This document shows positions 1-51,863 of a stretch of DNA of 64,000 bases, in pieces; positions within the stretch are counted from its first letter, which is position 1, and each line of letters starts with the position of its first letter. Under the pieces are notes generated by a model. That model was not told where the DNA came from. It searched no databases and was given only the letters and a program-made list of their open reading frames with translations. Location of the stretch: contig NIVC01001894.1 in NCBI GenBank assembly GCA_002269645.1, positions 186,001 to 250,000 on the forward strand. The letters run 5' to 3'. The DNA is from Macrostomum lignano. Its lineage: Eukaryota. Made by a program: the position numbers and the translations under genes.

Positions 1-1034
1 GCCAACACCGGACTCGAATTGTCCATCCCGGCTGACAGGCGGTCCAACGCCGACTCAACTGCCAGGCGACAGTCGCGGCCGGGCCGCAGCTCCAGGCACA
101 GCGTGGCGTCGGCATCAGACGAGGCCAACAGGCGAGCGTCGCGATCGATCAGCAGTGTCCGAGTGTCCGGAAACTGGCTGGACAGCAGGCGGCCGAATCG
201 GCCGACTCCGGCGCCAACGTCCAGCAGGATTAGGGATGATGATGATGATGAGGAATCGCCGGAGCCACCAGCCAGGCCGGACTCGCCGATGTAGGCCAGC
301 AGCCTCTCGGCCTCGTGCCGCTTCTTTGGCCGCAGCCGGCGGTACTGGTTTGACGCTGGGCGGGATGGTGGCGGCGGATTAAAGACGGCCGTCTGCTCGG
401 CGATGTCGGACAGGCAGGAGAACAGCTCGTCAAGGTGCAGCTGCGTCCCGATGCTCTCGGCTGGCAGGGGCCTACCGGACACAGCGGCATTCAGACAGGC
501 GTCGATCGCTTCAATCAGGCAGTCGGCGTCCTCCGCGGCCACGCGACCTCGCCAGGGCCGCACCAGCAGCGCGTCTGTCCAAGCGAAATCAACCGACCAC
601 CACAGCTGGTCGAGCAGGCGGTCCAGCCGGTCCAGGAGGCCAGACAGGCGCGGACTGATGCCTGCGAGCGATGACAGGAATGTGTGCGCAGCGGCGGGAT
701 TCGGCTGCTTGTACCTTTTGCTTCTTTGGTATAGCGATGAGCAGCGACTACTGGCTACAAGGCGGAGTGACAGATTCACTCCTGTGCCATCCTCACTGCC
801 ATCTCTGCATTGTGTGCCATCCTCACTGCCATCTCTGTAGTCTGTGCCATCCTCACTGCCATCTCTGCATTGTGTGCCATCCTCACTGCCATCTCTGTAG
901 TCTGTGCCATCCTCACTGCCATCTCTGCATTCTGTGCCATCCTCACTGCCATCTACAAGCATATATGCATGCATTGGTACCTCACCGCCGCGTACACTGA
1001 ATACTCGTACATGCAAGTCTGTCCATTGTTCCAC
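1..1034 (-). CDS. METTL25: METTL25-family putative methyltransferase, copy 1 (5' part only; 3' part runs off the window start)
   Basis: Identical to 5281-6314 of copy 2 (offset 5280). Confidence 0.75.
   Translation of the reverse strand, partial: MEQWTDLHVRVFSVRGGEVPMHAYMLVDGSEDGTECRDGSEDGTDYRDGSEDGTQCRDGSEDGTDYRDGSEDGTQCRDGSEDGTGVNLSLRLVASSRCSSLYQRSKRYKQPNPAAAHTFLSSLAGISPRLSGLLDRLDRLLDQLWWSVDFAWTDALLVRPWRGRVAAEDADCLIEAIDACLNAAVSGRPLPAESIGTQLHLDELFSCLSDIAEQTAVFNPPPPSRPASNQYRRLRPKKRHEAERLLAYIGESGLAGGSGDSSSSSSSLILLDVGAGVGRFGRLLSSQFPDTRTLLIDRDARLLASSDADATLCLELRPGRDCRLAVESALDRLSAGMDNSSPVL
782..955. repeat. 30-bp minisatellite (TGTGCCATCCTCACTGCCATCTCTGCATTG-like, ~6 units)
   Basis: Direct reading; encodes DGSEDGTECR-type decapeptides on the minus strand. 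Confidence 0.95.
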
Positions 1035-1309
1035 TGCCTATTATTGAGGAAAGATTGATCTAAAAAGCTGAGCAATGCACAAAAGCGCAATGTTTCCTGG
1101 TTGATAAGGACAATAAACGGAGTTTGTGGCACAGAGACAAGAGGGTAAGAAATGACAACCTGTCAAAAGAAGTGAGACAAAGAATGCTTCAGTATAATTG
1201 AGTCAGTCTTTACATCAGAGACTGATGGAGGAGCAAACTATTGTGAATCATAGCACTGACTACTGTATCCAGCATTTGAAAGACTTGTAAACAAATGTGT
1301 GAATTGATC

Positions 1310-2405
1310 TTTATGCTCAAGTTAAGCATCTACGATCAAGTTATGCTCAAGTTAAGCATTCATGACCAAGATATGCTCAAATTAAGCATTCATGACCAAG
1401 TTATGCTCAAATTAAGCATTCATGACCAAGTTATGCTCAAATTAAGCATTCATGACCAAGTTATGCTCAAATTAAGCATCTATGACAAATTCATGCTAAG
1501 TTAAGCATCTACATATGACCAATTTATGCTCAAGTTAGGCATCTATGACCAATTTATGCTCAAGTTAGGCATCTATGACCAATTTATGCTCAAGTTAGGC
1601 ATCTATGACCAATTTATGCTCAAGTTAAGCATTAAGACCAATTTATGCTCAAATGAAGCATTCATGACCAAGTTATGCTCAAATTAAGCATTCATGACCA
1701 AGTTATGCTCAAATTAAGCATTCATGACCAAGTTATGCTCAAATTAAGCATCTATGACAAATTCATGCTAAGTTAAGCATCTACATATGACCAATTTATG
1801 CTCAAGTTAGGCATCTATGACCAATTTATGCTCAAGTTAGGCCTCTATGACCAATTTATGCTCAAGTTAGGCATCTATGACCAATTTATGCTCAAGTTAG
1901 GCATCTATGACCAATTTATGCTCAAGTTAGGCATCTATGACCAATTTATGCTCAAGTTAAGCATCTATGACCAATTTATGCTCAAGTTAAGCATCTACAT
2001 ATGACCAATTTATGCTCAAGTTAGGCATCTATGATCAATTTATGCTCAAGTTAAGCATCTATGACCAATTTATGCTCAAGTTAAGCATCTACATATGACC
2101 AATTTATGCTCAAGTTAGGCATCTATGATCAATTTATGCTCAAGTTAGGCATCTATGATCAATTTATGCTCAAGTTAAGCTTTATGACCAACTTCTGATA
2201 AAGCTGAACATCAATAACCAATATATGCGCATGTTAAGCATCTATGACCAATCTCTGATGAAAATGAACCTCTGACCAATTTCTGATCAATCATCAAACT
2301 GAACATCCATGACCAATTTCTGATCAATCATCAAACTGAACATCCATGACCAATTTCTGATCAATCATCAAACTAAACATCCATGACCAATTTCTGATCA
2401 AACTG
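1310..2405. repeat. 30-bp AT-rich satellite (TTATGCTCAAGTTAGGCATCTATGACCAAT) with a 270-bp higher-order repeat, grading into a 37-bp unit
   Basis: Direct reading; the variant block TATGACAAATTCATGCTAAG occurs near 1481 and 1753. Confidence 0.9.
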
Positions 2406-2912
2406 AGAGTTTATGATTAACTCGTGCAAGAACGAGCATCTAAGAGTCTAAGATCAAATAAACTGACAAATCGTTTTCTTATCATTAAGTACGATTATGA
2501 TTGACAACTGTCACTTTAAGAAGAATTATAAAAAAACGTTGCGTTTAAAAATGTACGCTCATATTCAAAATGTTTAGGAAAGCCAAAGGTATTTAAGGCT
2601 TCAAGTTATAAATCAATGAGTTTATTTCGACAAAAACACAATGCTCAGCCGCATATGACGGGTGCAATGCTTTCAATAATGATCTTTGGCTACCCCATAA
2701 ATCACAACATGCAACACGCTAAGCACCAAAACACAGCAATTCACATTTCCACTAATAATTAAGATTTCTAGACAGAGACAGCAGTGAGGTACACAAGTGT
2801 ATTCAAATGGTAGCTAAAAAGTACATTGTTTTTCACAAGGATAAACAACTATGTAAGAATATTTTGGATAAAAAATAAAGTTTAACTAGCCAAAGCATTG
2901 CTGAGTCAGTGC

Positions 2913-3209
2913 TCATCTCCGTTTCTTTTTCTGAGCAGCGGCCAGATGCTGCTTCCTGTTGTTGGACACGTGGCCGGCTGTTGCGGTTGCCGGCCGAGTT
3001 CCGGCTGTCGAGTTGCCGACGCTGCCGCCGTCCTCGGCTTCGTCGGCTTCGCCCATCGAGGCGGTGTCGCTGGAAGCGGCTGGCGGCAGGCAGAACAGAG
3101 CCAGCAGACAGGCCAGCTGGAACAGGGCGCCTATGAGCAGCGCCCGGTCCGACAGCAGCTCGTACCAGGTGGCTGGCGGGATGAACAGCGAGCTGTCCTG
3201 GTCTGGCAT
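2913..3209 (-). CDS. MANBAL: MANBAL/UPF0239-family small single-pass membrane protein, copy 1 (98 aa)
   Basis: P-P-x-T-W-Y-E-L-L then a hydrophobic ALLIGALFQLACLLALFCLP segment (family pattern GLFLGAIFQLICVLAII), polar linker and basic KKKRR C-terminus. A YAG acceptor (TTGCAG|CCATG) lies 2 nt before the ATG. Confidence 0.8.
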   Translation of the reverse strand: MPDQDSSLFIPPATWYELLSDRALLIGALFQLACLLALFCLPPAASSDTASMGEADEAEDGGSVGNSTAGTRPATATAGHVSNNRKQHLAAAQKKKRR

Positions 3210-3267
3210 GGCTGCAACATGCGGCGGCGGATAGGGCTGGACTATCGCTCAGTACTGGGGTGGTGTG

Positions 3268-4110
3268 AGGGGTGTCCTGGATGCCACAGTCAGGGTAGCG
3301 GGAAGGGTGTTCTGGATGCTACAGACAGGGTAGCGGGAAGGGTGTCCTGGATGCCACAGTCAGGGTAGCGGGAAGGGTGTCCTGGATGCTACAGTCAGGG
3401 TAGCGGGAAGGGTGTCCTGGATGCTACAGACAGGGTAGCGGGAAGGGTGTCCTGGATGCTACAGTCAGGGTAGCGGGAAGGGTGTCCTGGATGCTACAGA
3501 CAGGGTAGCGGGAAGGGTGTCCTGGATGCTACAGTCAGGGTAGCGGGAAGGGTGTCCTGGATGCTACAGACAGGGTAGCGGGAAGGGTGTCCTGGATGCT
3601 ACAGTCAGGGTAGCGGGAAGGGTGTCCTGGATGCTACAGACAGAGTAGCGGGAAGGGTGTTCTGGGTGCTACAGACAGGGTAGCGGGAAGGGTGTCCTGG
3701 ATGCTACAGTCAGGGTAGCGGGAAGGGTGTCCTGGATGCTACAGACAGGGTAGCGGGAAGGGTGTCCTGGATGCTACAGACAGGGTAGCGGGAAGGGTGT
3801 CCTGGATGCTACAGACAGAGTAGCGGGAAGGGTGTCCTGGATGCTACAGACAGGGTAGCGGGAAGGGTGTCCTGGATGCTACAGACAGGGTAGCGGGAAG
3901 GATGTCCTGGGTGCTACAGACAGGGTAGCGGGAAGGGTGTCCTGGATGCTACAGACAGGGTAGCGGGAAGGATGTCCTGGATGCTACAGACAGGGTAGCG
4001 GGAAGGGTGTCCTGGATGCTACAGACAGGGTAGCGGGAAGGGTGTCCTGGGTGCTACAGGCAGGGTAGCGGGAAGGGTGTCCTGGATGCCACAGACAGGG
4101 TAGCAGGAAC
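3268..4110. repeat. 35-bp minisatellite (GGGTGTCCTGGATGCTACAGACAGGGTAGCGGGAA)
   Basis: Direct reading, ~24 units. Confidence 0.95.
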
Positions 4111-4610
4111 AGGAAGGGAGAGCCAAGGCTTCAATGCAAGAATCAATTGAAAATAAGACTGGGCCAAGCGGTGCCACCAGACTCATGCGAGCTGCAGAGT
4201 CTACATGTTGAAGAGGAGATAAGAATGGGAAGAAAAATCAATGAAAGCCAGAGAGAAATTTTGCGCATTGAAACTACGAAAGGATTTTCACAGTCCAAGG
4301 CTTTGTTGATAAAAGAATTCTCCCTGTTTGAGGCGGGGGTTGGGTGGGTCAAAAACCCGGAAAATTCAATACTCTGCATTTCTCCGCGGCTCTCAATAGG
4401 GCCTGATTGACAGCTAAGGGTGTATATATAAAGTACAAGCAAGTTTCAGGGCCCATACGCGGTAAGAGTAGTATATTCAAATAGTCAATAATTAATGAAT
4501 ACGACTTCATAAAAGCTTCAGATTACCAAAGAAATTCTGGACTATATTTATTACAAAATGCAATTTGAAATGATAAATTTTGCATGAATCAGGCAGTTCA
4601 CTGCATAATC

Positions 4611-6314
4611 CTAGGACTTCTTGGCTACAATAGCCAAGCATCTGGGCGACAGTTCGGGCGAGAACAGCTGCAACAGCTCCGCAGCTACTCCCCTCTCTTT
4701 AAGGTACAACTGAAGGTCAACTAAAAGTACAAACTCCAAAACCGGCCTCAGCAGAGTCTGCAATCGATAAACCAGTTCAGCAAGGCGAAGGTCCCCAGTT
4801 CGAGTCTCGGTCTCCCAGACAGTCAGAAGGCGACCCCGAATTGTCGGCCAGTCGACTTCGCCGTTGTCATGACGACCGGCTGCCTCGTCCAGAGCGGCCA
4901 GGTAGGCGGCGAAATCTCCATCGGCTGCAGGCGGGCGGATGCGCCGCAGCAGGCGGTCGGCGTCAGGGCGGGCGGCCAGCTGCAGCGCGGCCCGGCGCAG
5001 GCTGGCGTCAATACGAGCCTGCAGCCTCGTCCTGCCCGTTGCTCCTAGGGGCAGCAGCAGCAGAGTCTCCAGACGCTCCTGGCAGGCCAGCCGACGGGCC
5101 GGGACGCTGGCGAATAGGCGGGCCAAGCCGGGCAGGCGCGACACAGCGGCGCTGACTGGCGCTGAGAGCGCGGACTTGTGATAGCAGCAGGGCAGGCAGA
5201 TCAGGCTGCGCAGCCGCTGGCTGGAGGCGAACAAATCCACCAGACTGTTGGACAGGGAGCCGCAGGCGTGCTGGCCCAGCGCCAACACCGGACTCGAATT
5301 GTCCATCCCGGCTGACAGGCGGTCCAACGCCGACTCAACTGCCAGGCGACAGTCGCGGCCGGGCCGCAGCTCCAGGCACAGCGTGGCGTCGGCATCAGAC
5401 GAGGCCAACAGGCGAGCGTCGCGATCGATCAGCAGTGTCCGAGTGTCCGGAAACTGGCTGGACAGCAGGCGGCCGAATCGGCCGACTCCGGCGCCAACGT
5501 CCAGCAGGATTAGGGATGATGATGATGATGAGGAATCGCCGGAGCCACCAGCCAGGCCGGACTCGCCGATGTAGGCCAGCAGCCTCTCGGCCTCGTGCCG
5601 CTTCTTTGGCCGCAGCCGGCGGTACTGGTTTGACGCTGGGCGGGATGGTGGCGGCGGATTAAAGACGGCCGTCTGCTCGGCGATGTCGGACAGGCAGGAG
5701 AACAGCTCGTCAAGGTGCAGCTGCGTCCCGATGCTCTCGGCTGGCAGGGGCCTACCGGACACAGCGGCATTCAGACAGGCGTCGATCGCTTCAATCAGGC
5801 AGTCGGCGTCCTCCGCGGCCACGCGACCTCGCCAGGGCCGCACCAGCAGCGCGTCTGTCCAAGCGAAATCAACCGACCACCACAGCTGGTCGAGCAGGCG
5901 GTCCAGCCGGTCCAGGAGGCCAGACAGGCGCGGACTGATGCCTGCGAGCGATGACAGGAATGTGTGCGCAGCGGCGGGATTCGGCTGCTTGTACCTTTTG
6001 CTTCTTTGGTATAGCGATGAGCAGCGACTACTGGCTACAAGGCGGAGTGACAGATTCACTCCTGTGCCATCCTCACTGCCATCTCTGCATTGTGTGCCAT
6101 CCTCACTGCCATCTCTGTAGTCTGTGCCATCCTCACTGCCATCTCTGCATTGTGTGCCATCCTCACTGCCATCTCTGTAGTCTGTGCCATCCTCACTGCC
6201 ATCTCTGCATTCTGTGCCATCCTCACTGCCATCTACAAGCATATATGCATGCATTGGTACCTCACCGCCGCGTACACTGAATACTCGTACATGCAAGTCT
6301 GTCCATTGTTCCAC
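4611..6314 (-). CDS. METTL25: METTL25-family putative SAM-dependent methyltransferase, copy 2 (567-aa ORF; possible in-frame 204-nt intron 6265-6062)
   Basis: Motif I LLDVGAGVGRFG, LLIDRD, LGQHACGSLS (family H[AT]CGDL), LICLPCCYHK (family PCCY), LRPVLEFVLLVDLQLYL and C-terminal LFSPELSPRCLAIVAKK (family LFDPxxSPRxxAIxA). AATAAA lies ~60 nt after the stop. METTL25 versus METTL25B is not resolved. Confidence 0.8.
   Translation of the reverse strand: MEQWTDLHVRVFSVRGGEVPMHAYMLVDGSEDGTECRDGSEDGTDYRDGSEDGTQCRDGSEDGTDYRDGSEDGTQCRDGSEDGTGVNLSLRLVASSRCSSLYQRSKRYKQPNPAAAHTFLSSLAGISPRLSGLLDRLDRLLDQLWWSVDFAWTDALLVRPWRGRVAAEDADCLIEAIDACLNAAVSGRPLPAESIGTQLHLDELFSCLSDIAEQTAVFNPPPPSRPASNQYRRLRPKKRHEAERLLAYIGESGLAGGSGDSSSSSSSLILLDVGAGVGRFGRLLSSQFPDTRTLLIDRDARLLASSDADATLCLELRPGRDCRLAVESALDRLSAGMDNSSPVLALGQHACGSLSNSLVDLFASSQRLRSLICLPCCYHKSALSAPVSAAVSRLPGLARLFASVPARRLACQERLETLLLLPLGATGRTRLQARIDASLRRAALQLAARPDADRLLRRIRPPAADGDFAAYLAALDEAAGRHDNGEVDWPTIRGRLLTVWETETRTGDLRLAELVYRLQTLLRPVLEFVLLVDLQLYLKERGVAAELLQLFSPELSPRCLAIVAKKS
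6062..6235. repeat. 30-bp minisatellite, copy 2
   Basis: Identical to 782-955. Confidence 0.95.
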
Positions 6315-6589
6315 TGCCTATTATTGAGGAAAGATTGATCTAAAAAGCTGAGCAATGCACAAAAGCGCAATGTTTCCTGGTTGATAAGGACAATAAACGG
6401 AGTTTGTGGCACAGAGACAAGAGGGTAAGAAATGACAACCTGTCAAAAGAAGTGAGACAAAGAATGCTTCAGTATAATTGAGTCAGTCTTTACATCAGAG
6501 ACTGATGGAGGAGCAAACTATTGTGAATCATAGCACTGACTACTGTATCCAGCATTTGAAAGACTTGTAAACAAATGTGTGAATTGATC

Positions 6590-7670
6590 TTTATGCTCAA
6601 GTTAAGCATCTACGATCAAGTTATGCTCAAGTTAAGCATTCATGACCAAGATATGCTCAAATTAAGCATTCATGACCAAGTTATGCTCAAATTAAGCATT
6701 CATGACCAAGTTATGCTCAAATTAAGCATTCATGACCAAGTTATGCTCAAATTAAGCATCTATGACAAATTCATGCTAAGTTAAGCATCTACATATGACC
6801 AATTTATGCTCAAGTTAGGCATCTATGACCAATTTATGCTCAAGTTAGGCATCTATGACCAATTTATGCTCAAGTTAGGCATCTATGACCAATTTATGCT
6901 CAAGTTAAGCATTAAGACCAATTTATGCTCAAATGAAGCATTCATGACCAAGTTATGCTCAAATTAAGCATTCATGACCAAGTTATGCTCAAATTAAGCA
7001 TTCATGACCAAGTTATGCTCAAATTAAGCATCTATGACAAATTCATGCTAAGTTAAGCATCTACATATGACCAATTTATGCTCAAGTTAGGCATCTATGA
7101 CCAATTTATGCTCAAGTTAGGCCTCTATGACCAATTTATGCTCAAGTTAGGCATCTATGACCAATTTATGCTCAAGTTAGGCATCTATGACCAATTTATG
7201 CTCAAGTTAGGCATCTATGACCAATTTATGCTCAAGTTAAGCATCTATGACCAATTTATGCTCAAGTTAAGCATCTACATATGACCAATTTATGCTCAAG
7301 TTAGGCATCTATGATCAATTTATGCTCAAGTTTCTATGCTCAAGTTAAGCATCTACATATGACCAATTTATGCTCAAGTTAGGCATCTATGATCAATTTA
7401 TGCTCAAGTTAGGCATCTATGATCAATTTATGCTCAAGTTAAGCTTTATGACCAACTTCTGATAAAGCTGAACATCAATAACCAATATATGCGCATGTTA
7501 AGCATCTATGACCAATCTCTGATGAAAATGAACCTCTGACCAATTTCTGATCAATCATCAAACTGAACATCCATGACCAATTTCTGATCAATCATCAAAC
7601 TGAACATCCATGACCAATTTCTGATCAATCATCAAACTAAACATCCATGACCAATTTCTGATCAAACTGA
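6590..7670. repeat. 30-bp satellite, copy 2 (16 bp shorter than copy 1)
   Basis: Same units as 1310-2405, with an indel near 7330. Confidence 0.9.
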
Positions 7671-8176
7671 GAGTTTATGATTAACTCGTGCAAGAACGAG
7701 CATCTAAGAGTCTAAGATCAAATAAACTGACAAATCGTTTTCTTATCATTAAGTACGATTATGATTGACAACTGTCACTTTAAGAAGAATTATAAAAAAA
7801 CGTTGCGTTTAAAAATGTACGCTCATATTCAAAATGTTTAGGAAAGCCAAAGGTATTTAAGGCTTCAAGTTATAAATCAATGAGTTTATTTCGACAAAAA
7901 CACAATGCTCAGCCGCATATGACGGGTGCAATGCTTTCAATAATGATCTTTGGCTACCCCATAAATCACAACATGCAACACGCTAAGCACCAAAACACAG
8001 CAATTCACATTTCCACTAATAATTAAGATTTCTAGACAGAGACAGCAGTGAGGTACACAAGTGTATTCAAATGGTAGCTAAAAAGTACATTGTTTTTCAC
8101 AAGGATAAACAACTATGTAAGAATATTTTGGATAAAAAATAAAGTTTAACTAGCCAAAGCATTGCTGAGTCAGTGC

Positions 8177-8473
8177 TCATCTCCGTTTCTTTTTCTGAGC
8201 AGCGGCCAGATGCTGCTTCCTGTTGTTGGACACGTGGCCGGCTGTTGCGGTTGCCGGCCGAGTTCCGGCTGTCGAGTTGCCGACGCTGCCGCCGTCCTCG
8301 GCTTCGTCGGCTTCGCCCATCGAGGCGGTGTCGCTGGAAGCGGCTGGCGGCAGGCAGAACAGAGCCAGCAGACAGGCCAGCTGGAACAGGGCGCCTATGA
8401 GCAGCGCCCGGTCCGACAGCAGCTCGTACCAGGTGGCTGGCGGGATGAACAGCGAGCTGTCCTGGTCTGGCAT
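8177..8473 (-). CDS. MANBAL: MANBAL/UPF0239-family protein, copy 2 (98 aa)
   Basis: Translation identical to 2913-3209. Confidence 0.8.
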   Translation of the reverse strand: MPDQDSSLFIPPATWYELLSDRALLIGALFQLACLLALFCLPPAASSDTASMGEADEAEDGGSVGNSTAGTRPATATAGHVSNNRKQHLAAAQKKKRR

Positions 8474-8531
8474 GGCTGCAACATGCGGCGGCGGATAGGG
8501 CTGGACTATCGCTCAGTACTGGGGTGGTGTG

Positions 8532-9395
8532 AGGGGTGTCCTGGATGCCACAGTCAGGGTAGCGGGAAGGGTGTTCTGGATGCTACAGACAGGGTAGCGG
8601 GAAGGGTGTCCTGGATGCCACAGTCAGGGTAGCGGGAAGGGTGTCTGGATGCTACAGACAGGGTAAGGGTGTCCTGGATGCTACAGTCAGGGTAAAGGGT
8701 GTCCTGGATGCTACAGACAGGGTAGCGGGAAGGGTGTCCTGGATGCTACAGTCAGGGTAGCGGGAAGGGTGTCCTGGATGCTACAGACAGGGTAGCGGGA
8801 AGGGTGTCCTGGATGCTACAGTCAGGGTAGCGGGAAGGGTGTCCTGGATGCTACAGACAGGGTAGCGGGAAGGGTGTCCTGGATGCTACAGTCAGGGTAG
8901 CGGGAAGGGTGTCCTGGATGCTACAGACAGAGTAGCGGGAAGGGTGTTCTGGGTGCTACAGACAGGGTAGCGGGAAGGGTGTCCTGGATGCTACAGTCAG
9001 GGTAGCGGGAAGGGTGTCCTGGATGCTACAGACAGGTAGCGGGAAGGGTGTCCTGGATGCTACAGACAGGGTAGCGGGAAGGGTGTCCTGGATGCTACAG
9101 ACAGAGTAGCGGGAAGGGTGTCCTGGATGCTACAGACAGGGTAGCGGGAAGGGTGTCCTGGATGCTACAGACAGGGTAGCGGGAAGGATGTCCTGGGTGC
9201 TACAGACAGGGTAGCGGGAAGGGTGTCCTGGATGCTACAGACAGGGTAGCGGGAAGGATGTCCTGGATGCTACAGACAGGGTAGCGGGAAGGGTGTCCTG
9301 GATGCTACAGACAGGGTAGCGGGAAGGGTGTCCTGGGTGCTACAGGCAGGGTAGCGGGAAGGGTGTCCTGGATGCCACAGACAGGGTAGCAGGAA
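8532..9395. repeat. 35-bp minisatellite, copy 2
   Basis: Same unit as 3268-4110, with several small indels. Confidence 0.95.
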
Positions 9396-9896
9396 CAGGA
9401 AGGGAGAGCCAAGGCTTCAATGCAAGAATCAATTGAAAATAAGACTGGGCCAAGCGGTGCCACCAGACTCATGCGAGCTGCAGAGTCTACATGTTGAAGA
9501 GGAGATAAGAATGGGAAGAAAAATCAATGAAAGCCAGAGAGAAATTTTGCGCATTGAAACTACGAAAGGATTTTCACAGTCCAAGGCTTTGTTGATAAAA
9601 GAATTCTCCCTGTTTGAGGCGGGGGTTGGGTGGGTCAAAAACCCGGAAAATTCAATACTCTGCATTTCTCCGCGGCTCTCAATAGGGCCTGATTGACAGC
9701 TAAGGGTGTATATATAAAGTACAAGCAAGTTTCAGGGCCCATACGCGGTAAGAGTAGTATATTCAAATAGTCAATAATTAATGAATACGACTTCATAAAA
9801 GCTTCAGATTACCAAAGAAATTCTGGACTATATTTATTACAAAATGCAATTTGAAATGATAAATTTTGCATGAATCAGGCAGTTCACTGCATAATC

Positions 9897-11345
9897 CTAG
9901 GACTTCTTGGCTACAATAGCCAAGCATCTGGGCGACAGTTCGGGCGAGAACAGCTGCAACAGCTCCGCAGCTACTCCCCTCTCTTTAAGGTACAACTGAA
10001 GGTCAACTAAAAGTACAAACTCCAAAACCGGCCTCAGCAGAGTCTGCAATCGATAAACCAGTTCAGCAAGGCGAAGGTCCCCAGTTCGAGTCTCGGTCTC
10101 CCAGACAGTCAGAAGGCGACCCCGAATTGTCGGCCAGTCGACTTCGCCGTTGTCATGACGACCGGCTGCCTCGTCCAGAGCGGCCAGGTAGGCGGCGAAA
10201 TCTCCATCGGCTGCAGGCGGGCGGATGCGCCGCAGCAGGCGGTCGGCGTCAGGGCGGGCGGCCAGCTGCAGCGCGGCCCGGCGCAGGCTGGCGTCAATAC
10301 GAGCCTGCAGCCTCGTCCTGCCCGTTGCTCCTAGGGGCAGCAGCAGCAGAGTCTCCAGACGCTCCTGGCAGGCCAGCCGACGGGCCGGGACGCTGGCGAA
10401 TAGGCGGGCCAAGCCGGGCAGGCGCGACACAGCGGCGCTGACTGGCGCTGAGAGCGCGGACTTGTGATAGCAGCAGGGCAGGCAGATCAGGCTGCGCAGC
10501 CGCTGGCTGGAGGCGAACAAATCCACCAGACTGTTGGACAGGGAGCCGCAGGCGTGCTGGCCCAGCGCCAACACCGGACTCGAATTGTCCATCCCGGCTG
10601 ACAGGCGGTCCAACGCCGACTCAACTGCCAGGCGACAGTCGCGGCCGGGCCGCAGCTCCAGGCACAGCGTGGCGTCGGCATCAGACGAGGCCAACAGGCG
10701 AGCGTCGCGATCGATCAGCAGTGTCCGAGTGTCCGGAAACTGGCTGGACAGCAGGCGGCCGAATCGGCCGACTCCGGCGCCAACGTCCAGCAGGATTAGG
10801 GATGATGATGATGATGAGGAATCGCCGGAGCCACCAGCCAGGCCGGACTCGCCGATGTAGGCCAGCAGCCTCTCGGCCTCGTGCCGCTTCTTTGGCCGCA
10901 GCCGGCGGTACTGGTTTGACGCTGGGCGGGATGGTGGCGGCGGATTAAAGACGGCCGTCTGCTCGGCGATGTCGGACAGGCAGGAGAACAGCTCGTCAAG
11001 GTGCAGCTGCGTCCCGATGCTCTCGGCTGGCAGGGGCCTACCGGACACAGCGGCATTCAGACAGGCGTCGATCGCTTCAATCAGGCAGTCGGCGTCCTCC
11101 GCGGCCACGCGACCTCGCCAGGGCCGCACCAGCAGCGCGTCTGTCCAAGCGAAATCAACCGACCACCACAGCTGGTCGAGCAGGCGGTCCAGCCGGTCCA
11201 GGAGGCCAGACAGGCGCGGACTGATGCCTGCGAGCGATGACAGGAATGTGTGCGCAGCGGCGGGATTCGGCTGCTTGTACCTTTTGCTTCTTTGGTATAG
11301 CGATGAGCAGCGACTACTGGCTACAAGGCGGAGTGACAGATTCAC
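9897..11345 (-). CDS. METTL25: METTL25-family methyltransferase, copy 3 (482-aa open frame with no N-terminal ATG)
   Basis: Body identical to copy 2. The ORF caller starts at GTG, the first in-frame ATG is residue 252 (10592), and an upstream in-frame stop lies at 11394-11396. AATAAA at 9833-9838 (minus strand). Confidence 0.75.
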   Translation of the reverse strand: MNLSLRLVASSRCSSLYQRSKRYKQPNPAAAHTFLSSLAGISPRLSGLLDRLDRLLDQLWWSVDFAWTDALLVRPWRGRVAAEDADCLIEAIDACLNAAVSGRPLPAESIGTQLHLDELFSCLSDIAEQTAVFNPPPPSRPASNQYRRLRPKKRHEAERLLAYIGESGLAGGSGDSSSSSSSLILLDVGAGVGRFGRLLSSQFPDTRTLLIDRDARLLASSDADATLCLELRPGRDCRLAVESALDRLSAGMDNSSPVLALGQHACGSLSNSLVDLFASSQRLRSLICLPCCYHKSALSAPVSAAVSRLPGLARLFASVPARRLACQERLETLLLLPLGATGRTRLQARIDASLRRAALQLAARPDADRLLRRIRPPAADGDFAAYLAALDEAAGRHDNGEVDWPTIRGRLLTVWETETRTGDLRLAELVYRLQTLLRPVLEFVLLVDLQLYLKERGVAAELLQLFSPELSPRCLAIVAKKS

Positions 11346-11988
11346 TCCTGAGACAGGGGACTGAGTCTCACTCCTGAAACACGGGAGTGAGTCTCAATCC
11401 TGAGACAGGGGACTGAGTCTCAATCCTGAGACAGGGGACTGAGTCTCAATCCTGAGACACGGGAGTGAGTCTCAATCCTGAGACAGGGGAGTGAGTCTCA
11501 ATCCTGAGACAGGGGAGTGAGTCTCAATCCTGAGACAGGGGACTGAGTCTCACTCCTGAGACAGGGGAGTCGGGGACTGAGTCTCAATCCTGAGACAGGG
11601 GACTGAGTCTCAATCCTGAGACAGGGGACTGAGTCTCACTCCTGAGACAGGGGAGTCGGGGACTGAGTCTCAATCCTGAGACAGGGGAGTCGGGGACTGA
11701 GTCTCAATCCTGAGACAGGGGACTGAGTCTCAATCCTGAGACAGGGGACTGAGTCTCACTCCTGAGACAGGGGAGTCGGGGACTGAGTCTCAATCCTGAG
11801 ACAGGGGAGTCGGGGACTGAGTCTCAATCCTGAGACAGGGGACTGAGTCTCACTCCTGAGACAGGGGAGTCGGGGACTGAGTCTCAATCCTGAGACAGGG
11901 GACTGAGTCTCAATCCTGAGACAGGGGAGTGACAGCCTCAATCCTGAGACAGGGAGTGACAACTAAACCCGGGACAGGGGAGTGACAG
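11346..11988. repeat. 26/34-bp minisatellite (CCTGAGACAGGGGACTGAGTCTCAAT) with an internal TGAGAC/GTCTCA inverted repeat
   Basis: Direct reading; bounded by the direct 10-mer GGAGTGACAG at 11330-11339 and 11979-11988. Confidence 0.95.
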
Positions 11989-12294
11989 CTAAACCGAACA
12001 AAAAAAACAAGAAAACAAATCAGGACTCAGTAACGCAGCATCGGTAATAACAGATGAAATGCACAATTGACTGTATATTTATAACTTACACAATAGAATT
12101 GAATTTCGCAAGAATGTACTTTAACGAACCAACTGAGCAAATGCCACAATTATACGAGCAACAGACAGACTTGAAAATCGCATATTTGTACCAAGTTGAG
12201 TGCAATTTTTAAAAAGATATGTAAATGAATTGATCAAACATCTGCACTCTTCAACATCACTTAACAAAATAGCAATAATCGTAAGTTCTTCAGA

Positions 12295-12778
12295 GTTCAG
12301 TCTCACCAATAATATTGCGTCACTGATTTCAGTCTCACCAATAATATTGCGTCACTGATTTCAGTCTCACCAATAATATTGCGTCACTGATTTCAGTCTC
12401 ACCAATAATATTGCGTCACTGATTTCAGTCTCACCAATAATATTGCGTCACTGATTTCAGTCTCACCAATAATATTGCGTCAATGATTTCAGTCTCACCA
12501 ATAATATTGCGTCACTGATTTCAGTCTCACCAATAATATTGCTTCACTGATTTCAGTCTCACCAATAATATTGCGTCACTGATTTCAGTCTCACCAATAA
12601 TATTGCTTCACTGATTTCAGTCTCACCAATAATATTGCTTCACTGATTTCAGTCTCACCAATAATATTGCGTCACTGATTTCAGTCTCACCAATAATATT
12701 GCGTCACCAATTGCCTCACCAATAATATTGCTTCACTGATTTCAGTCTCACCAATAATATTGCGTCACTGATTTCAGG
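12295..12778. repeat. 32-bp minisatellite (CAGTCTCACCAATAATATTGCGTCACTGATTT)
   Basis: Direct reading, ~15 units, just downstream of the NSUN4-like stop. Confidence 0.95.
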
Positions 12779-12825
12779 GTCACCCGACAAGCCGACAACA
12801 CAAGCCACAGTCTCAATCGTCATCT

Positions 12826-15800
12826 TCAATCCACCCGTTTCAATTTGCACACAAAGCTCGGTCCATAATTAGCCAGCAGGTGCGGCAGCACCAGCAGCCC
12901 CACTTGGCGGCTCTCCACCCGGCAGCCGGCGCCAACCAGCAGGCTGGCCAGCGGCCGCAGGTCCACCAGCTTGAATGCCGGCTGCAGTTTAGCCAGAGCA
13001 GACAGCACAACAGCCTCATTCTGTGCTGGCGACATTGTGCAGGTTGAGTAGACCAAGCTGGCTCCCGGACGGCAGGCCGCGGCGCCGGCTAGAAGCAGCT
13101 GGAGCTGACTGCAGGTGAATTTGTACATAAATAGATATTGACAACAATATCCCAATAACTCTACTCAAAGTAGTGCAAAACGCAAAATAATAATATTACG
13201 TATTGGGCAGGCCGACTCTTTCTTTGCTGCGACGCCCGCTAAACAGGTCGGCCTCGGGATCGTTCAACGAGTGCCGATCTCCCGAGCAGGTGGGATCAAC
13301 TAGAACGCGATCGAATGAGTTCAGGGGATAAGCGCCACTGTTTAGCGCGTTGGCGTACAGCTGCGAAACTGAGCATCCGGCTAGCACTGACGGCGGCACG
13401 TGCGAGCTTAGCAGGCGGGCGAGGCGGCTGGATCTGGGGATGGCGGGCGCATTAGCTTGAGTAGTGAGATCGGCGTGTGAGCAGATAGCTACTCAGATCA
13501 GTGTGAGCAGATAGCTACTCAGATCAGTGTGTGAGCAGATAGCTACTCAGATCAGTGTGTGAGCAGATAGCTACTCAGATCAGTGTGTGAGTAGATAGCT
13601 ACTCAGATCAATGTGTGAGCAGATAGCTACTCAGATCAATGTGTGAGTAGATAGCTACTCAGATCAGTGTGTGAGTAGATAGCTACTCAGATCAGTGTGT
13701 GAGCAGATAGCTACTCAGATCAATGTGTGAGCAGATAGCTACTCAGATCAATGTGTGAGTAGATAGCTACTCAGATCAGTGTGTGAGCAGATAGCTACTC
13801 AGATCGGTGTGAGCAGATAGCTACTCAGATCAGTGTGTGAGCAGATAGCTACTCAGATCAATGTGTGAGCAGATAGCTACTCAGATCAATGTGTGAGCAG
13901 ATAGCTACTCAGATCAATGTGTGAGTAGATAGCTACTCAGATCAGTGTGTGAGTAGATAGCTACTCAGATCAGTGTGTGAGTAGATAGCTACTCAGATCG
14001 GTGTGAGCAGATAGCTACTCAGATCGGTGTGAGCAGATAGCTACTCAGATCAATGTGTGAGCAGATAGCTACTCAGATCGGTGTGAGCAGATAGCTACTC
14101 AGATCAGTGTGTGAGCAGATAGCTACTCAGATAAGTGTGTGAGCAGATAGCTACTCAGATCAATGTGTGAGCAGATAGCTACTCAGATCAATGTGTGAGC
14201 AGATAGCTACTCAGATCAGTGTGTGAGTAGATAGCTACTCAGATCAGTGTGTGAGCAGATAGCTACTCAGATCAATGTGTGAGCAGATAGCTACTCAGAT
14301 CAATGTGTGAGTAGATAGCTACTCAGATCAGTGTGTGAGCAGATAGCTACTCAGATCGGTGTGAGCAGATAGCTACTCAGATCAGTGTGTGAGCAGATAG
14401 CTACTCAGATCAGTGTGTGAGCAGATAGCTACTCAGATCAATGTGTGAGCAGATAGCTACTCAGATCAATGTGTGAGTAGATAGCTACTCAGATCAGTGT
14501 GTGAGCAGATAGCTACTCAGATCAGTGTGTGAGCAGATAGCTACTCAGATCAATGTGTGAGCAGATAGCTACTCAGATCAATGTGTGAGCAGATAGCTAC
14601 TCAGATCAATGTGTGAGCAGATAGCTACTCAGATCAATGTGTGAGCAGATAGCTACTCAGATCAATGTGTGAGCAGATAGCTACTCAGATCAGTGTGTGA
14701 GCAGATAGCTACTCAGATCAATGTGTGAGCAGATAGCTACTCAGATCAATGTGTGAGCAGATAGCTACTCAGATCAGTGTGTGAGCAGATAGCTACTCAG
14801 ATCAATGTGTGAGCAGATAGCTACTCAGATCAATGTGTGAGCAGATAGCTACTCAGATCAATGTGTGAGCAGATAGCTACTCAGATCAATGTGTGAGCAG
14901 ATAGCTACTCAGATCAATGTGTGAGTAGATAGCTACTCAGATCAGTGTGTGAGCAGATAGCTACTCAGATCAGTGTGTGAGTAGATAGCTACTCAGATCG
15001 GTGTGAGCAGATAGCTACTCAGATCAATGTGTGAGCAGATAGCTACTCAGATCAATGTGTGAGCAGATAGCTACTCAGATCAATGTGTGAGCAGATAGCT
15101 ACTCAGATCAATGTGTGAGCAGATAGCTACTCAGATCAGTGTGTGAGCAGATAGCTACTCAGATCAATGTGTGAGCAGATAGCTACTCAGATCAATGTGT
15201 GAGCAGATAGCTACTCAGATCAATGTGTGAGCAGATAGCTACTCAGATCAATGTGTGAGCAGATAGCTACTCAGATCAATGTGTGAGCAGATAGCTACTC
15301 AGATCAATGTGTGAGCAGATAGCTACTCAGATCAGTGTGTGAGCAGATAGCTACTCAGATCAGTGTGTGAGCAGATAGCTACTCAGATCAGTGTGTGAGC
15401 AGATAGCTACTCAGATCAGTGTGTGAGCATAGCACACTCAATGAGGTTAAGAAAGCAAAACACACAAGGCAGCGCAGACCTAGCGGAGGACTTGTCCAAG
15501 CATAGCATTTGTCCTGGCAGTGCCTGCTGCAGCAGACAATAGGCCTTTGACCCGGGAGCGGAGCACAGGTCTAGCACCGAGTCGCCATCGCCTGGGCAAA
15601 GGGCCAAGGCGGCGGCCACAGAGCCGAGATCCATTGGCAAATAGGGGCACAGGCCGGTGGTTTGATCTGGCTTTGGCCGGGGGAACCACCTGTGTGTGTG
15701 TAAGGTTCTTTAATCATTTGCCTGCCACTGGAATTCTAGCTTGACTAGCAGAGTTTCGGGTATAGCCAAGGTACTTTTTACTCCTAAATTTATTCATTGT

Positions 15801-26581: not shown

Positions 26582-51863
<25,282 letters not shown>

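What the first reader, a model, noticed from the sequence alone, without database searches (positions are those of the whole stretch)
11330..12020. ATG-less METTL25-like gene apparently built to take its start codon from a spliced leader, with a minisatellite inserted at the acceptor
Seen: copy 3 has no ATG until residue 252, inside the MTase fold, and its frame is closed upstream at 11394-11396. On the minus strand, a long U-rich tract ends in TTTAG| at 11989 and is followed by CTGTCACTCC. The same 10-mer begins the coding frame at 11339 (CTG TCA CTC CGC). Removing the 649 bp between the two 10-mers gives TTTAG|CTG TCA CTC CGC..., a phase-0 acceptor. Established: flatworm spliced leaders end in AUG, and that AUG can serve as the initiator. 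Inference: SL-AUG would give MLSLRLVASSRCSSLYQRSKRYKQ, an acid-free Arg/Ser/Leu-rich peptide resembling a mitochondrial presequence, next to a gene for the mitochondrial enzyme NSUN4. In the assembled allele, trans-splicing at 11988 runs into a TGA after 16 codons. The minisatellite may therefore have disabled or rerouted the original copy, or a downstream phase-0 AG (AAGCAG|CCG at 11270) may be used instead.
Basis: partly seen in the sequence, partly recalled or inferred. Interest (0 to 1): 0.72.

Follow-up and report, generated by a model that had tools for sequence, protein, structure and literature searches.

The report
Start-codon-less flatworm methyltransferase gene behind minisatellite
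A conserved methyltransferase gene of the flatworm Macrostomum lignano has no start codon of its own and sits just behind another gene, so it most likely borrows the AUG at the end of the spliced leader, a known flatworm trick; which splice site it uses could not be determined.

Summary
The window is Macrostomum lignano contig NIVC01001894.1. The sequence facts hold. A 481-codon Methyltransf_32 ORF (METTL25B/RRNAD1-like, minus strand 11339-9897) has an in-frame TGA at 11396-11394 and no in-frame ATG before codon 250. A U-rich tract ends in TTTAG at 11989. The 26-bp minisatellite between it and the ORF starts and ends with CTGTCACTCC.

New findings:
- The 10-mer is part of the repeat unit and occurs three times here, so the clean 649-bp excision follows from periodicity.
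- A homeologous contig (L003, 98% identical protein, single copy) is also ATG-less. It has the same array with the same edge units, 15 units against 23. The array is therefore old and grew in place.
- The array predates the local 5.28-kb triplication.
- NSUN4 lies upstream on the same strand, about 347 nt away after subtracting repeats. A TATAAA lies 94 nt before TTTAG. This is operon geometry.
- L003 has an exact YTNCAG phase-0 acceptor that the window lacks.

An SL-donated AUG is the best explanation (about 0.5). The acceptor in use, any disabling of the gene, and the mitochondrial presequence remain unproven. No transcript data could be reached. This is a new member of a known kind.

The parts
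9897..11339 (-). ATG-less ORF of the Methyltransf_32 (METTL25B/RRNAD1-like) gene, copy 3. It has 481 codons from CTG (LSLRLVASS...) to TAG at 9899-9897.
   Evidence: Pfam PF13679 at 39.3 bits against a cutoff of 27. All 15 invariant columns of a 12-sequence family alignment are retained.
11394..11396 (-). In-frame TGA that closes the frame 18 codons upstream of LSLRL.
10590..10592 (-). First and only in-frame ATG (codon 250), inside the methyltransferase fold.
11342..11995 (.). 26-bp minisatellite with 34-bp variants. It has 23 units between TTTAG and the ORF. The unit is CT(GT)CA[C/G]TCC-CCTGTCTCAGGATTGAGA. There are stops in all three sense frames and no ATG.
   Evidence: The same array with 15 units is present in L003.
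11989..12024 (-). U-rich tract ending TTTAG (G at 11989). It is the strongest acceptor-like site and the candidate ancestral or current SL trans-splice acceptor. In the assembled allele it is out of frame with the ORF and gives a 17-codon uORF.
   Evidence: pyrimidine fraction 0.80. Conserved in L003 with one T>G change.
12078..12083 (-). TATAAA, a possible poly(A) signal of NSUN4, 94 nt upstream of the TTTAG acceptor.
   Evidence: This is the only canonical or variant hexamer in the unique spacer. Its function is inferred.
12296..12784 (.). 32-bp minisatellite (15 copies) in the NSUN4 3' region. Each unit carries TTG|GTGAGA.
12826..13155 (-). Last coding exon of NSUN4 (stop at 12828-12826), upstream on the same strand.
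   Evidence: Pfam RsmB/F. Gene calls of 519-521 aa. It aligns to the C-terminus of human NSUN4 with E = 2e-16, against 1e-5 or worse for other NSUN families.
11361..11367 (-). Two phase-0 AGs inside the last repeat unit. GAG|ACT has its G at 11367 and gives M-TQSPVSGVNLSLRL. CTCAG|TCC has its G at 11361 and gives M-SPVSGVNLSLRL. Both are downstream of the in-frame stop and both have weak pyrimidine context.
   Evidence: Identical in L003.
11271..11275 (-). Phase-0 AGs AAG|CAG|CCG, with G at 11274 and 11271. They give M-QPNPAAA or M-PNPAAA. The upstream context is purine-rich. In L003 AAG is changed to AAA, so only the CAG survives there.
11340..11350 (-). 5' breakpoint of the 5.28-kb tandem duplication. 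The unit starts at GAGTGAAT (11347-11340) after a 3-nt CAG microhomology (11350-11348), 8 nt upstream of the 10-mer.
4611..6053 (-). Copy 2 of the same ORF, with an identical protein. Copy 1 is cut by the window start and its 5' end is at 773. Both lack the U-tract/TTTAG context.
9833..9838 (-). AATAAA 59 nt after the methyltransferase stop codon.

Best explanation
Copy 3 is the ancestral copy of a METTL25B/RRNAD1-like methyltransferase gene. It lies downstream of NSUN4 in an operon-like same-strand gene string of M. lignano.

It has no initiator codon of its own and is most likely expressed as an SL trans-spliced mRNA whose AUG comes from the 3' end of the 35-nt spliced leader.

The U-tract/TTTAG at 11989, about 94 nt after a TATAAA, has the geometry of the operon-internal trans-splice site. 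If the 26-bp array is collapsed to a single unit, that site joins CTG TCA CTC in phase 0.

The array arose in place by amplification of the acceptor/exon-junction sequence. It is old enough to be shared by both homeologous contigs.

In the present alleles a productive SL-AUG must use a weaker phase-0 AG close to the ORF. The candidates are 11361, 11367, 11274 and 11271 in the window, and TTCCAG|TCA in L003. Otherwise the gene is poorly translated.

Shown: the ATG-less ORF, synteny, array structure, phases and conservation. Inferred: trans-splicing itself, the acceptor used and the operon.
For: - Organism and SL. The SL is ...TTGCATG. 45% of conserved M. lignano genes are trans-spliced. Operon spacers peak near 100 bp after subtracting repeats, with a 1-kb threshold.
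- The ATG-less 481-codon ORF keeps its family motifs.
- The homeolog L003 is equally ATG-less, with an intact ORF.
- NSUN4 lies upstream on the same strand. The spacer from the NSUN4 stop to the acceptor is 836 nt, or about 347 nt after subtracting the 489-nt array.
- TATAAA lies 94 nt before TTTAG, and the 20 nt before the AG are 80% pyrimidine.
- No upstream ATG ORF reaches the one consensus GTAAGT donor.
- The array edges are shared by the window and L003. The last 13 nt of the 5' flank resemble the unit (P = 0.06).
- SL-AUG initiation is established in flatworms: Cheng et al. 2006 as cited in PMC9851317.
Against: - No SL-containing read or cDNA was seen. The protein collection holds no RNA-derived M. 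lignano sequence even for NSUN4.
- In the assembled alleles the strong acceptor is out of frame and gives a 17-codon uORF.
- The only exact YTNCAG in the window spacer (11374) gives M-E-stop.
- The in-frame AGs have poor pyrimidine tracts, 0.20-0.55.
- Phase 0 of the collapsed allele has a 1-in-3 chance expectation.
- dN/dS between the homeologs is 0.49 and not significantly below 1 (P = 0.13), so current function is not demonstrated.
Confidence: 0.5

Rival explanations
1. The gene is decaying or translationally crippled. Growth of the array moved the only good acceptor 650 nt (window) or 390 nt (L003) away from the ORF. The SL-AUG now opens a 2-17-codon uORF and little or no protein is made. 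The ORF is still intact only because the loss is recent.
For: - Every strong acceptor gives an early stop.
- dN/dS is 0.49 and not significantly below 1, with 9 nonsynonymous and 7 synonymous differences.
- The protein is very diverged from all relatives, at most about 30% identity over full-length matches.
Against: - The 481-codon ORF is intact in four copies on two contigs.
- All 15 invariant family residues are kept.
- The array with the same edges is shared by contigs that differ by 1.1%, so the gene has lived with it for some time.
- Phase-0 AGs close to the ORF exist in both contigs.
Confidence: 0.2
2. A cis-spliced upstream exon supplies a normal ATG and the minisatellite lies in an intron. 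One example is the ATG at 12823 with one of the TTG|GTGAGA donors of the 32-bp array.
For: Enumeration finds in-frame ATG-donor-acceptor combinations conserved in both contigs. One is ATG 12823 with donor 12751 and acceptor 11361 or 11367. GTGAG matches the M. lignano donor consensus GT[G/A]AG.
Against: - The ATG at 12823 overlaps the last base of the NSUN4 stop codon and lies inside the NSUN4 3' region.
- The donors are minisatellite units repeated 15 times.
- The natural acceptor TTTAG gives a stop in that frame.
- The only GTAAGT donor (12089) is not reached by any ATG ORF.
- Any spacer this long yields such combinations: 107 in the window and 163 in L003.
Confidence: 0.1
3. Non-AUG initiation occurs at a genomic codon, either the GTG at 11345 or the CTG at 11339, on a transcript whose 5' end lies upstream.
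For: GTG (11345) and CTG (11339) are in frame just downstream of the stop. The CTG has A at position -3.
Against: - Non-AUG starts are rare in animals and normally inefficient.
- An SL-AUG or other upstream reading would interfere.
- There is no supporting data.
Confidence: 0.05
4. An assembly problem in the repetitive spacer of this PacBio-based assembly hides the real 5' structure. The array length, or a missing segment carrying an ATG exon, could be wrong.
For: Tandem arrays are error-prone. Array lengths differ between the contigs and among the three units.
Against: Two independently assembled contigs agree base for base at both array edges, in the 300-nt unique spacer (2 mismatches and 1 indel) and in the first 100 nt of the ORF.
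Confidence: 0.05

Closest known systems
Flatworm mRNAs that take their initiator Met from the 3'-terminal AUG of the spliced leader (Cheng, Cohen, Ndegwa and Davis 2006, J Biol Chem 281:733; summarised in PMC9851317)
   Same: - The SL ends in AUG.
- A conserved ORF has no in-frame genomic AUG ahead of its conserved domain.
- Phase-0 acceptors are available.
- In S. mansoni the SL AUG is in frame in 28% of trans-spliced transcripts, and more than 40 cDNAs need it.
   Different: - Trans-splicing of this gene was not observed here.
- In the assembled alleles the best acceptor is separated from the ORF by a 390-650-nt minisatellite and is out of frame.
- I found no published survey of SL-AUG use in M. 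lignano in the library searched.
M. lignano operons with repeat-inflated spacers (Ustyantsev and Berezikov 2021, PMC8629364)
   Same: - The genes are same-strand neighbours.
- The spacer is under 1 kb once TRF repeats are subtracted.
- Minisatellites make up most of the spacer.
- Both genes are conserved.
   Different: - The paper's criterion also needs SL reads at the downstream gene, which could not be checked.
- Here the repeat sits between the acceptor-like site and the ORF. It is built from the junction sequence itself, so it is more than spacer filler.
METTL25B / RRNAD1 (Pfam Methyltransf_32) seven-beta-strand methyltransferases
   Same: - The Pfam match is above the gathering score.
- The KKxHE, DxGxGxG, HxCG, CCYHK and C-terminal SPR motifs are kept.
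- The length is typical.
- The best named hits are METTL25B/RRNAD1-like.
   Different: - Identity to full-length relatives is only about 30%.
- The protein is extremely GC-driven in composition, with 1 Met in 481 aa.
- No solved structure is detectable by sequence.
- The family's function is itself unclear (PMC8662637).
C. elegans operon internal sites (poly(A) signal, about 100 nt with a U-rich element, then the trans-splice site)
   Same: TATAAA is followed after 94 nt, including a U-rich tract, by a YAG acceptor.
   Different: - This is an analogy from my own knowledge of nematode operons.
- M. lignano has a single SL.
- No functional data exist for a U-rich element in flatworms.

Membership tests
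SL-AUG-initiated flatworm mRNA | The organism's spliced leader ends in AUG. | tested here: met
   The contig is M. lignano. The SL is CGGTCTCTTACTGCGAAGACTCAATTTATTGCATG (PMC8629364).
SL-AUG-initiated flatworm mRNA | There is no in-frame genomic AUG upstream of the conserved domain. | tested here: met
   The frame is closed at 11396-11394 and the first ATG is codon 250. The same holds in L003.
SL-AUG-initiated flatworm mRNA | The mapped SL junction is in phase 0 with the ORF. | not testable with these tools
   No RNA data could be reached. Phase-0 AGs exist at 11367, 11361, 11274 and 11271. The strong site at 11989 is phase 0 only if the array is collapsed.
SL-AUG-initiated flatworm mRNA | Translation starts at the SL AUG. 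| not testable with these tools
   This needs ribosome profiling, reporter assays or N-terminal proteomics.
M. lignano operon (criteria of PMC8629364) | The genes are adjacent, on the same strand, and less than 1 kb apart after repeat adjustment. | tested here: met
   From the NSUN4 stop at 12826 to the acceptor at 11989 is 836 nt. Subtracting the 489-nt array leaves about 347 nt. The order is the same in L003.
M. lignano operon (criteria of PMC8629364) | The downstream gene is SL trans-spliced. | not testable with these tools
   No SL-read track was available.
METTL25B/RRNAD1 (Methyltransf_32) | The Pfam PF13679 match is above the gathering score and the family's invariant residues are present. 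| tested here: met
   39.3 bits against a cutoff of 27. 15 of 15 invariant columns are kept. Named hits are METTL25B/RRNAD1-like.
Mitochondrial presequence | The N-terminus is acid-free and rich in Arg, Ser, Leu and Ala. | tested here: inconclusive
   There are no D/E and 6 K/R in 23 residues. However, 33% of random stop-free 23-codon windows here are acid-free, and 4% also have at least 6 K/R.
Mitochondrial presequence | The segment forms an amphipathic helix, or a dedicated predictor (TargetP, MitoFates) is positive. | not tested
   No predictor was available. A crude Eisenberg moment over 11-residue windows peaks at 0.54 and is mostly 0.2-0.4.
Mitochondrial presequence | Family members are mitochondrial proteins. 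| not tested
   The one review read treats METTL25B function as unclear and does not describe it as mitochondrial. The NSUN4 neighbourhood is the only link.
Minisatellite (tandem array) | Head-to-tail copies of a 10-100-bp unit are detected by TRF. | tested here: met
   Position 11342-11954, period 26, 21.7 copies, score 671. The unit parse gives 23 units in the window and 15 in L003.

The most novel reading that the evidence does not exclude
A trans-splice acceptor/exon junction has itself been amplified into a minisatellite, in two diverged contigs. The result is a 390-650-nt leader full of decoy acceptors, each giving a 2-17-codon SL-AUG uORF. The conserved enzyme has no genomic start codon, so it can only be made from rare use of a phase-0 AG at the array's end. 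Array length would then set the protein output of an SL-AUG-dependent gene. One contig (L003) may be evolving a replacement acceptor, TTCCAG|TCA.
Probability: 0.12. Interest if true: 0.6.

Novelty: new member of a known kind. Interest (0 to 1): 0.4.

Why it matters
If SL reads confirm it, this would be a documented case in the free-living model flatworm M. lignano of a conserved gene that depends entirely on the spliced-leader AUG. So far the phenomenon has been shown mainly in schistosomes.

The case is practical for annotation. Gene callers return a headless protein here (P0001 starts at SSLAG).

It would also show how the abundant minisatellites of this genome interact with trans-splice sites inside operons.

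If transcripts instead show an ordinary upstream exon, or no expression, the finding is an annotation curiosity.

Tried and rejected
- Transcript evidence was sought through the protein collections. The full-length search and the exhaustive HMMER search found only the genomic calls P0001 and P0155.
- Exact look-ups of M+LSLRL..., M+SPVSG..., M+PNP... and M+QPNP... were absent.
- A control search with the NSUN4 last exon also found no M. lignano RNA-derived protein. The absence is therefore uninformative about expression.
- The supplements of three M. lignano papers were searched for RRNAD1, METTL25 and NSUN4 with no hits.
- GC3 step: the first 23 codons have GC3 13/23 against 0.75 downstream (binomial P = 0.04). 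However, 13% of internal 23-codon windows are as low, so this was rejected as evidence.
- ATG depletion of the ORF against dinucleotide shuffles is explained by high GC3 and a Met-poor, GC-driven composition. It is not a signal.
- ORF nt 11-40 show no similarity to the repeat unit (P = 0.72), so the periodicity stops at the 10-mer.
- Synonymous/nonsynonymous comparison of the first 23 codons gave 2 synonymous and 0 nonsynonymous differences, too few to test.
- The best non-self homologs on Logan contigs (L004, L005) gave no useful context.
- No SL-like sequence is present in the window.
- No PDB relative was found by sequence.
Full report
**Where we are.**
- The gene call P0001 maps to NIVC01001894.1 of assembly GCA_002269645.1. 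This is the accession series and assembly used in the Mlig_3_7 papers. Window x equals contig x + 186,000.
- The window is riddled with minisatellites, 74 TRF rows. That fits the 15% tandem-repeat content reported for this genome (PMC5730564).
- M. lignano has one 35-nt spliced leader, CGGTCTCTTACTGCGAAGACTCAATTTATTGCATG. About 30% of its genes are trans-spliced and about 15% lie in operons.
- The top trans-acceptor motif is [T/C]TNCAG. Operon spacers peak near 100 bp once repeats are subtracted, and the working threshold is 1 kb (PMC8629364).

**The observation.**
- TGA lies at 11396-11394. The ORF starts with CTG TCA CTC CGC at 11339 and runs 481 codons to 9897.
- The single in-frame ATG is at 10592. 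It is codon 250 from L and 252 from the GTG at 11345.
- That ATG lies after the DVGAGVG SAM motif and before HACG, inside the Pfam Methyltransf_32 match.
- The tract CCTGATTTGTTTTCTTGTTTTTTTTGTTCGGTTTAG ends at 11989 and is followed by CTGTCACTCC. The same 10-mer sits at 11339.
- ATG joined at 11988 reads MLSLPCPGFSCHSLSQD and then a stop.

Two qualifications apply.
- The 10-mer occurs three times (11988, 11935, 11339). It is simply the first ten bases of the repeat unit, CT(GT)CA[C/G]TCC-CCTGTCTCAGGATTGAGA. A clean 649-bp excision between two 10-mers is what any in-register tandem array gives.
- The named relatives are METTL25B/RRNAD1, not METTL25.

**The gene family.**
- The protein is very diverged, with about 30% identity to its best full-length relatives. 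Only one protein in 1.84 billion representatives scores below 1e-30, and that is the genomic call itself.
- It nevertheless keeps all 15 invariant columns of a 12-member alignment: KK-HE, D-G-G, H-CG, CC-H and others.
- It has 1 Met in 481 residues, with 10% FYMINK and 35% GARP. This is a GC-driven composition.
- That composition also explains the apparent ATG depletion in all frames.
- Relatives begin 25-37 residues before the conserved W-x-x-DF motif. The present ORF would have 58 such residues if it began at M+LSLRL, 35 at M+PNPAAA and 25 at M+SSLAG.

**The triplication.**
- The three copies are units of a 5.28-kb tandem repeat, 99-99.7% identical.
- The unit starts at GAGTGAAT, 8 nt upstream of the 10-mer.
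- Internal junctions read ...GATGGCACAG|GAGTGAAT. After the last unit the sequence continues GGCACAG|TAATATAC. Upstream of copy 3 it reads ...CTGTCTCAG|GAGTGAAT.
- The duplication therefore used a 3-nt CAG microhomology, and the tail of the 26-bp array was already in place when it happened.
- Copy 3 is the ancestral copy. Copies 1 and 2 have lost the U-tract/TTTAG context.

**The homeolog, which is the most informative new result.**
- The 90% cluster of P0001 has one other member, P0155, on contig NIVC01002924.1.
- That locus (L003) has NSUN4, then one methyltransferase copy, then UPF0239, then the next gene. It confirms the single-copy ancestral order. The protein is 98% identical.
- L003 has the same U-tract (one T>G change), the same TTTAG|CTGTCACTCC, the same first three and last four array units and the same ...GGAGTGAAT|CTGTCACTCCGCC end. 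It has 15 units where the window has 23.
- L003 is equally ATG-less.
- The array is therefore not a private insertion that disabled this allele. It grew in place and is length-polymorphic in its middle. Both contigs have carried it while diverging by 1.1%.
- The two ORFs differ at 16 positions, 7 synonymous and 9 nonsynonymous. dN/dS is 0.49, with P = 0.13 against neutrality. This is too little to prove constraint.
- In the first 23 codons there are two differences, both synonymous. That is too few to test.
- The 300-nt unique spacer differs by 2 mismatches and 1 indel.

**Operon geometry.**
- The upstream same-strand gene is genuinely NSUN4. Its last exon aligns end to end with the C-terminus of human NSUN4 at E = 2e-16, against 1e-5 or worse for other NSUN families.
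- From its stop (12826) to TTTAG (11989) is 836 nt, of which 489 are the 32-bp array. That leaves about 347 nt.
- The only poly(A)-signal-like hexamer in the unique part is TATAAA at 12083, 94 nt before the acceptor. The U-rich tract lies between them.
- The methyltransferase has AATAAA 59 nt after its own stop.
- This arrangement fits an internal operon trans-splice site. That reading is an inference from geometry, from published M. lignano statistics and from the nematode analogy.

**Which acceptor?**
- In the assembled alleles, 11989 gives a 17-codon uORF.
- The pyrimidine-rich CTCAG|GA sites in each unit give M-D-stop or M-E-stop. This includes 11374, the only exact YTNCAG in the window spacer.
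- Phase-0 AGs downstream of the in-frame stop are:
  - 11367 (GAG|ACT),
  - 11361 (CTCAG|TCC, giving M-SPVSGVNLSLRL...),
  - 11274 and 11271 (AAG|CAG|CCG).
- All four have weak pyrimidine context.
- In L003, AAG is AAA, and codon 33 is CAG where the window has CTG (L33Q). That change creates CACATTCCAG|TCA, an exact YTNCAG in phase 0 giving M-SSLAGISPRL.... This start fits the family's usual N-terminal length. Without an outgroup I cannot tell whether it is a gained or a lost acceptor.

**The collapsed allele.**
- The last 13 nt of the 5' flank (TGTTCGGTTTAG) resemble the unit's TGTCTCAGGATTGAG (P = 0.06). The ORF matches the unit only over the 10-mer; nt 11-40 do not match (P = 0.72).
- One rotated unit therefore equals TGTTCGGTTTAG+CTGTCACTCC, which is exactly the junction.
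It is a reasonable reconstruction. Its phase-0 property has a 1-in-3 chance expectation, and it cannot be verified here.

**Rivals.**
The ATGs at 12257, 12241 and 12183 all terminate earlier.
- Enumeration does find in-frame combinations. One is ATG 12823 with a TTG|GTGAGA donor of the 32-bp array and acceptors at 11361 or 11367. That ATG overlaps the last base of the NSUN4 stop codon, and the donors are repeat units. Such combinations are plentiful, 107 in the window and 163 in L003.
- Decay of the gene, non-AUG initiation and mis-assembly remain possible. They are scored in the rival list.

**Presequence.**
- LSLRLVASSRCSSLYQRSKRYKQ has no acidic residue and has six K/R. In this window 33% of stop-free 23-codon windows are acid-free, and 4% also have at least 6 K/R.
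- R, S and L are the six-codon amino acids. The hydrophobic moment is modest.
- GC3 of these codons is lower than downstream, but not unusually so.
- The review read on METTL proteins gives no mitochondrial role for METTL25B.
- I rate the presequence idea at roughly 0.15-0.2. TargetP and MitoFates were not available.

**What could not be done.**
- No transcript, SL-read or annotation track was reachable. The protein collections contain only genome-derived calls for this gene. They contain no M. lignano RNA-derived protein even for NSUN4.
- Paper supplements had no entry for these genes.

**Verdict.**
An SL-donated AUG is the best explanation for a conserved, twice-attested ATG-less ORF in operon position (about 0.5).
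- 'Inserted minisatellite that disabled the copy' is replaced by an old array that grew in place from the junction and is shared by both homeologs.
- The used acceptor and the mitochondrial targeting are open.
- SL-AUG initiation is known in flatworms and repeat-inflated operon spacers are known in M. lignano. This is therefore a new member of a known kind, with a modest chance of a more interesting acceptor-amplification story.

Noticed in passing
window 6062-6254 (minus strand), likewise 782-974: In copies 2 and 1 the duplication junction fuses the ORF in frame to a 30-bp (10-codon) minisatellite. ATGs lie at 6254 and 6242. This gives a possible conventional start: MHAYMLVDGSEDGT(E/Q)CR..., about 6 acidic repeats, then GVNLSLRL.... 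Only the derived copies have a genomic in-frame ATG.
   Followed up: partly
L003 9999-10003 (= window 11241-11237): The homeolog carries CAG where the window has CTG at codon 33 (L33Q). The change creates an exact YTNCAG acceptor, TTCCAG|TCA, in phase 0 with the ORF, giving M-SSLAGISPRL. All three window copies lack it.
   Followed up: partly
window 12296-12784, 11342-11995, 8534-9395, 6590-7516, 6062-6234: Every spacer of the same-strand string NSUN4 > methyltransferase > UPF0239 > next copy holds its own unrelated minisatellite. The spacers differ in length between the window contig and L003. Several units contain a pyrimidine run followed by AG, or a GTGAG, so they look like splice sites.
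   Followed up: partly
window 8177-8479 (minus strand): A UPF0239-family ORF of about 100 aa has its own ATG at 8473. It lies downstream of each methyltransferase copy and is immediately preceded by the 35-bp array. It is part of the 5.28-kb duplicated unit and is also present in L003.
   Followed up: no
window 48041-48524: The 10-mer CTGTCACTCC is also the core of an unrelated 20-bp minisatellite (GCTTCTCTCTGTCACTCCCT on the minus strand, 21 exact hits). The arrays in this region share short motifs.
   Followed up: no
window 9897-11339: The methyltransferase has a single Met in 481 residues. Its amino-acid composition is strongly GC-driven: L 18%, A 13%, R 11%, S 10%, and FYMINK only 10%. The + strand ORFs over it (for example 10969-11364 and 10534-10860) are antisense artefacts of that composition.
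   Followed up: partly
window 1-11350; L001 15150-15170: The 5.28-kb tandem triplication is specific to this contig. The homeologous contig is single copy. The breakpoints share a 3-nt CAG microhomology, and the units differ by only 1-6 mismatches plus array-length changes.
   Followed up: yes
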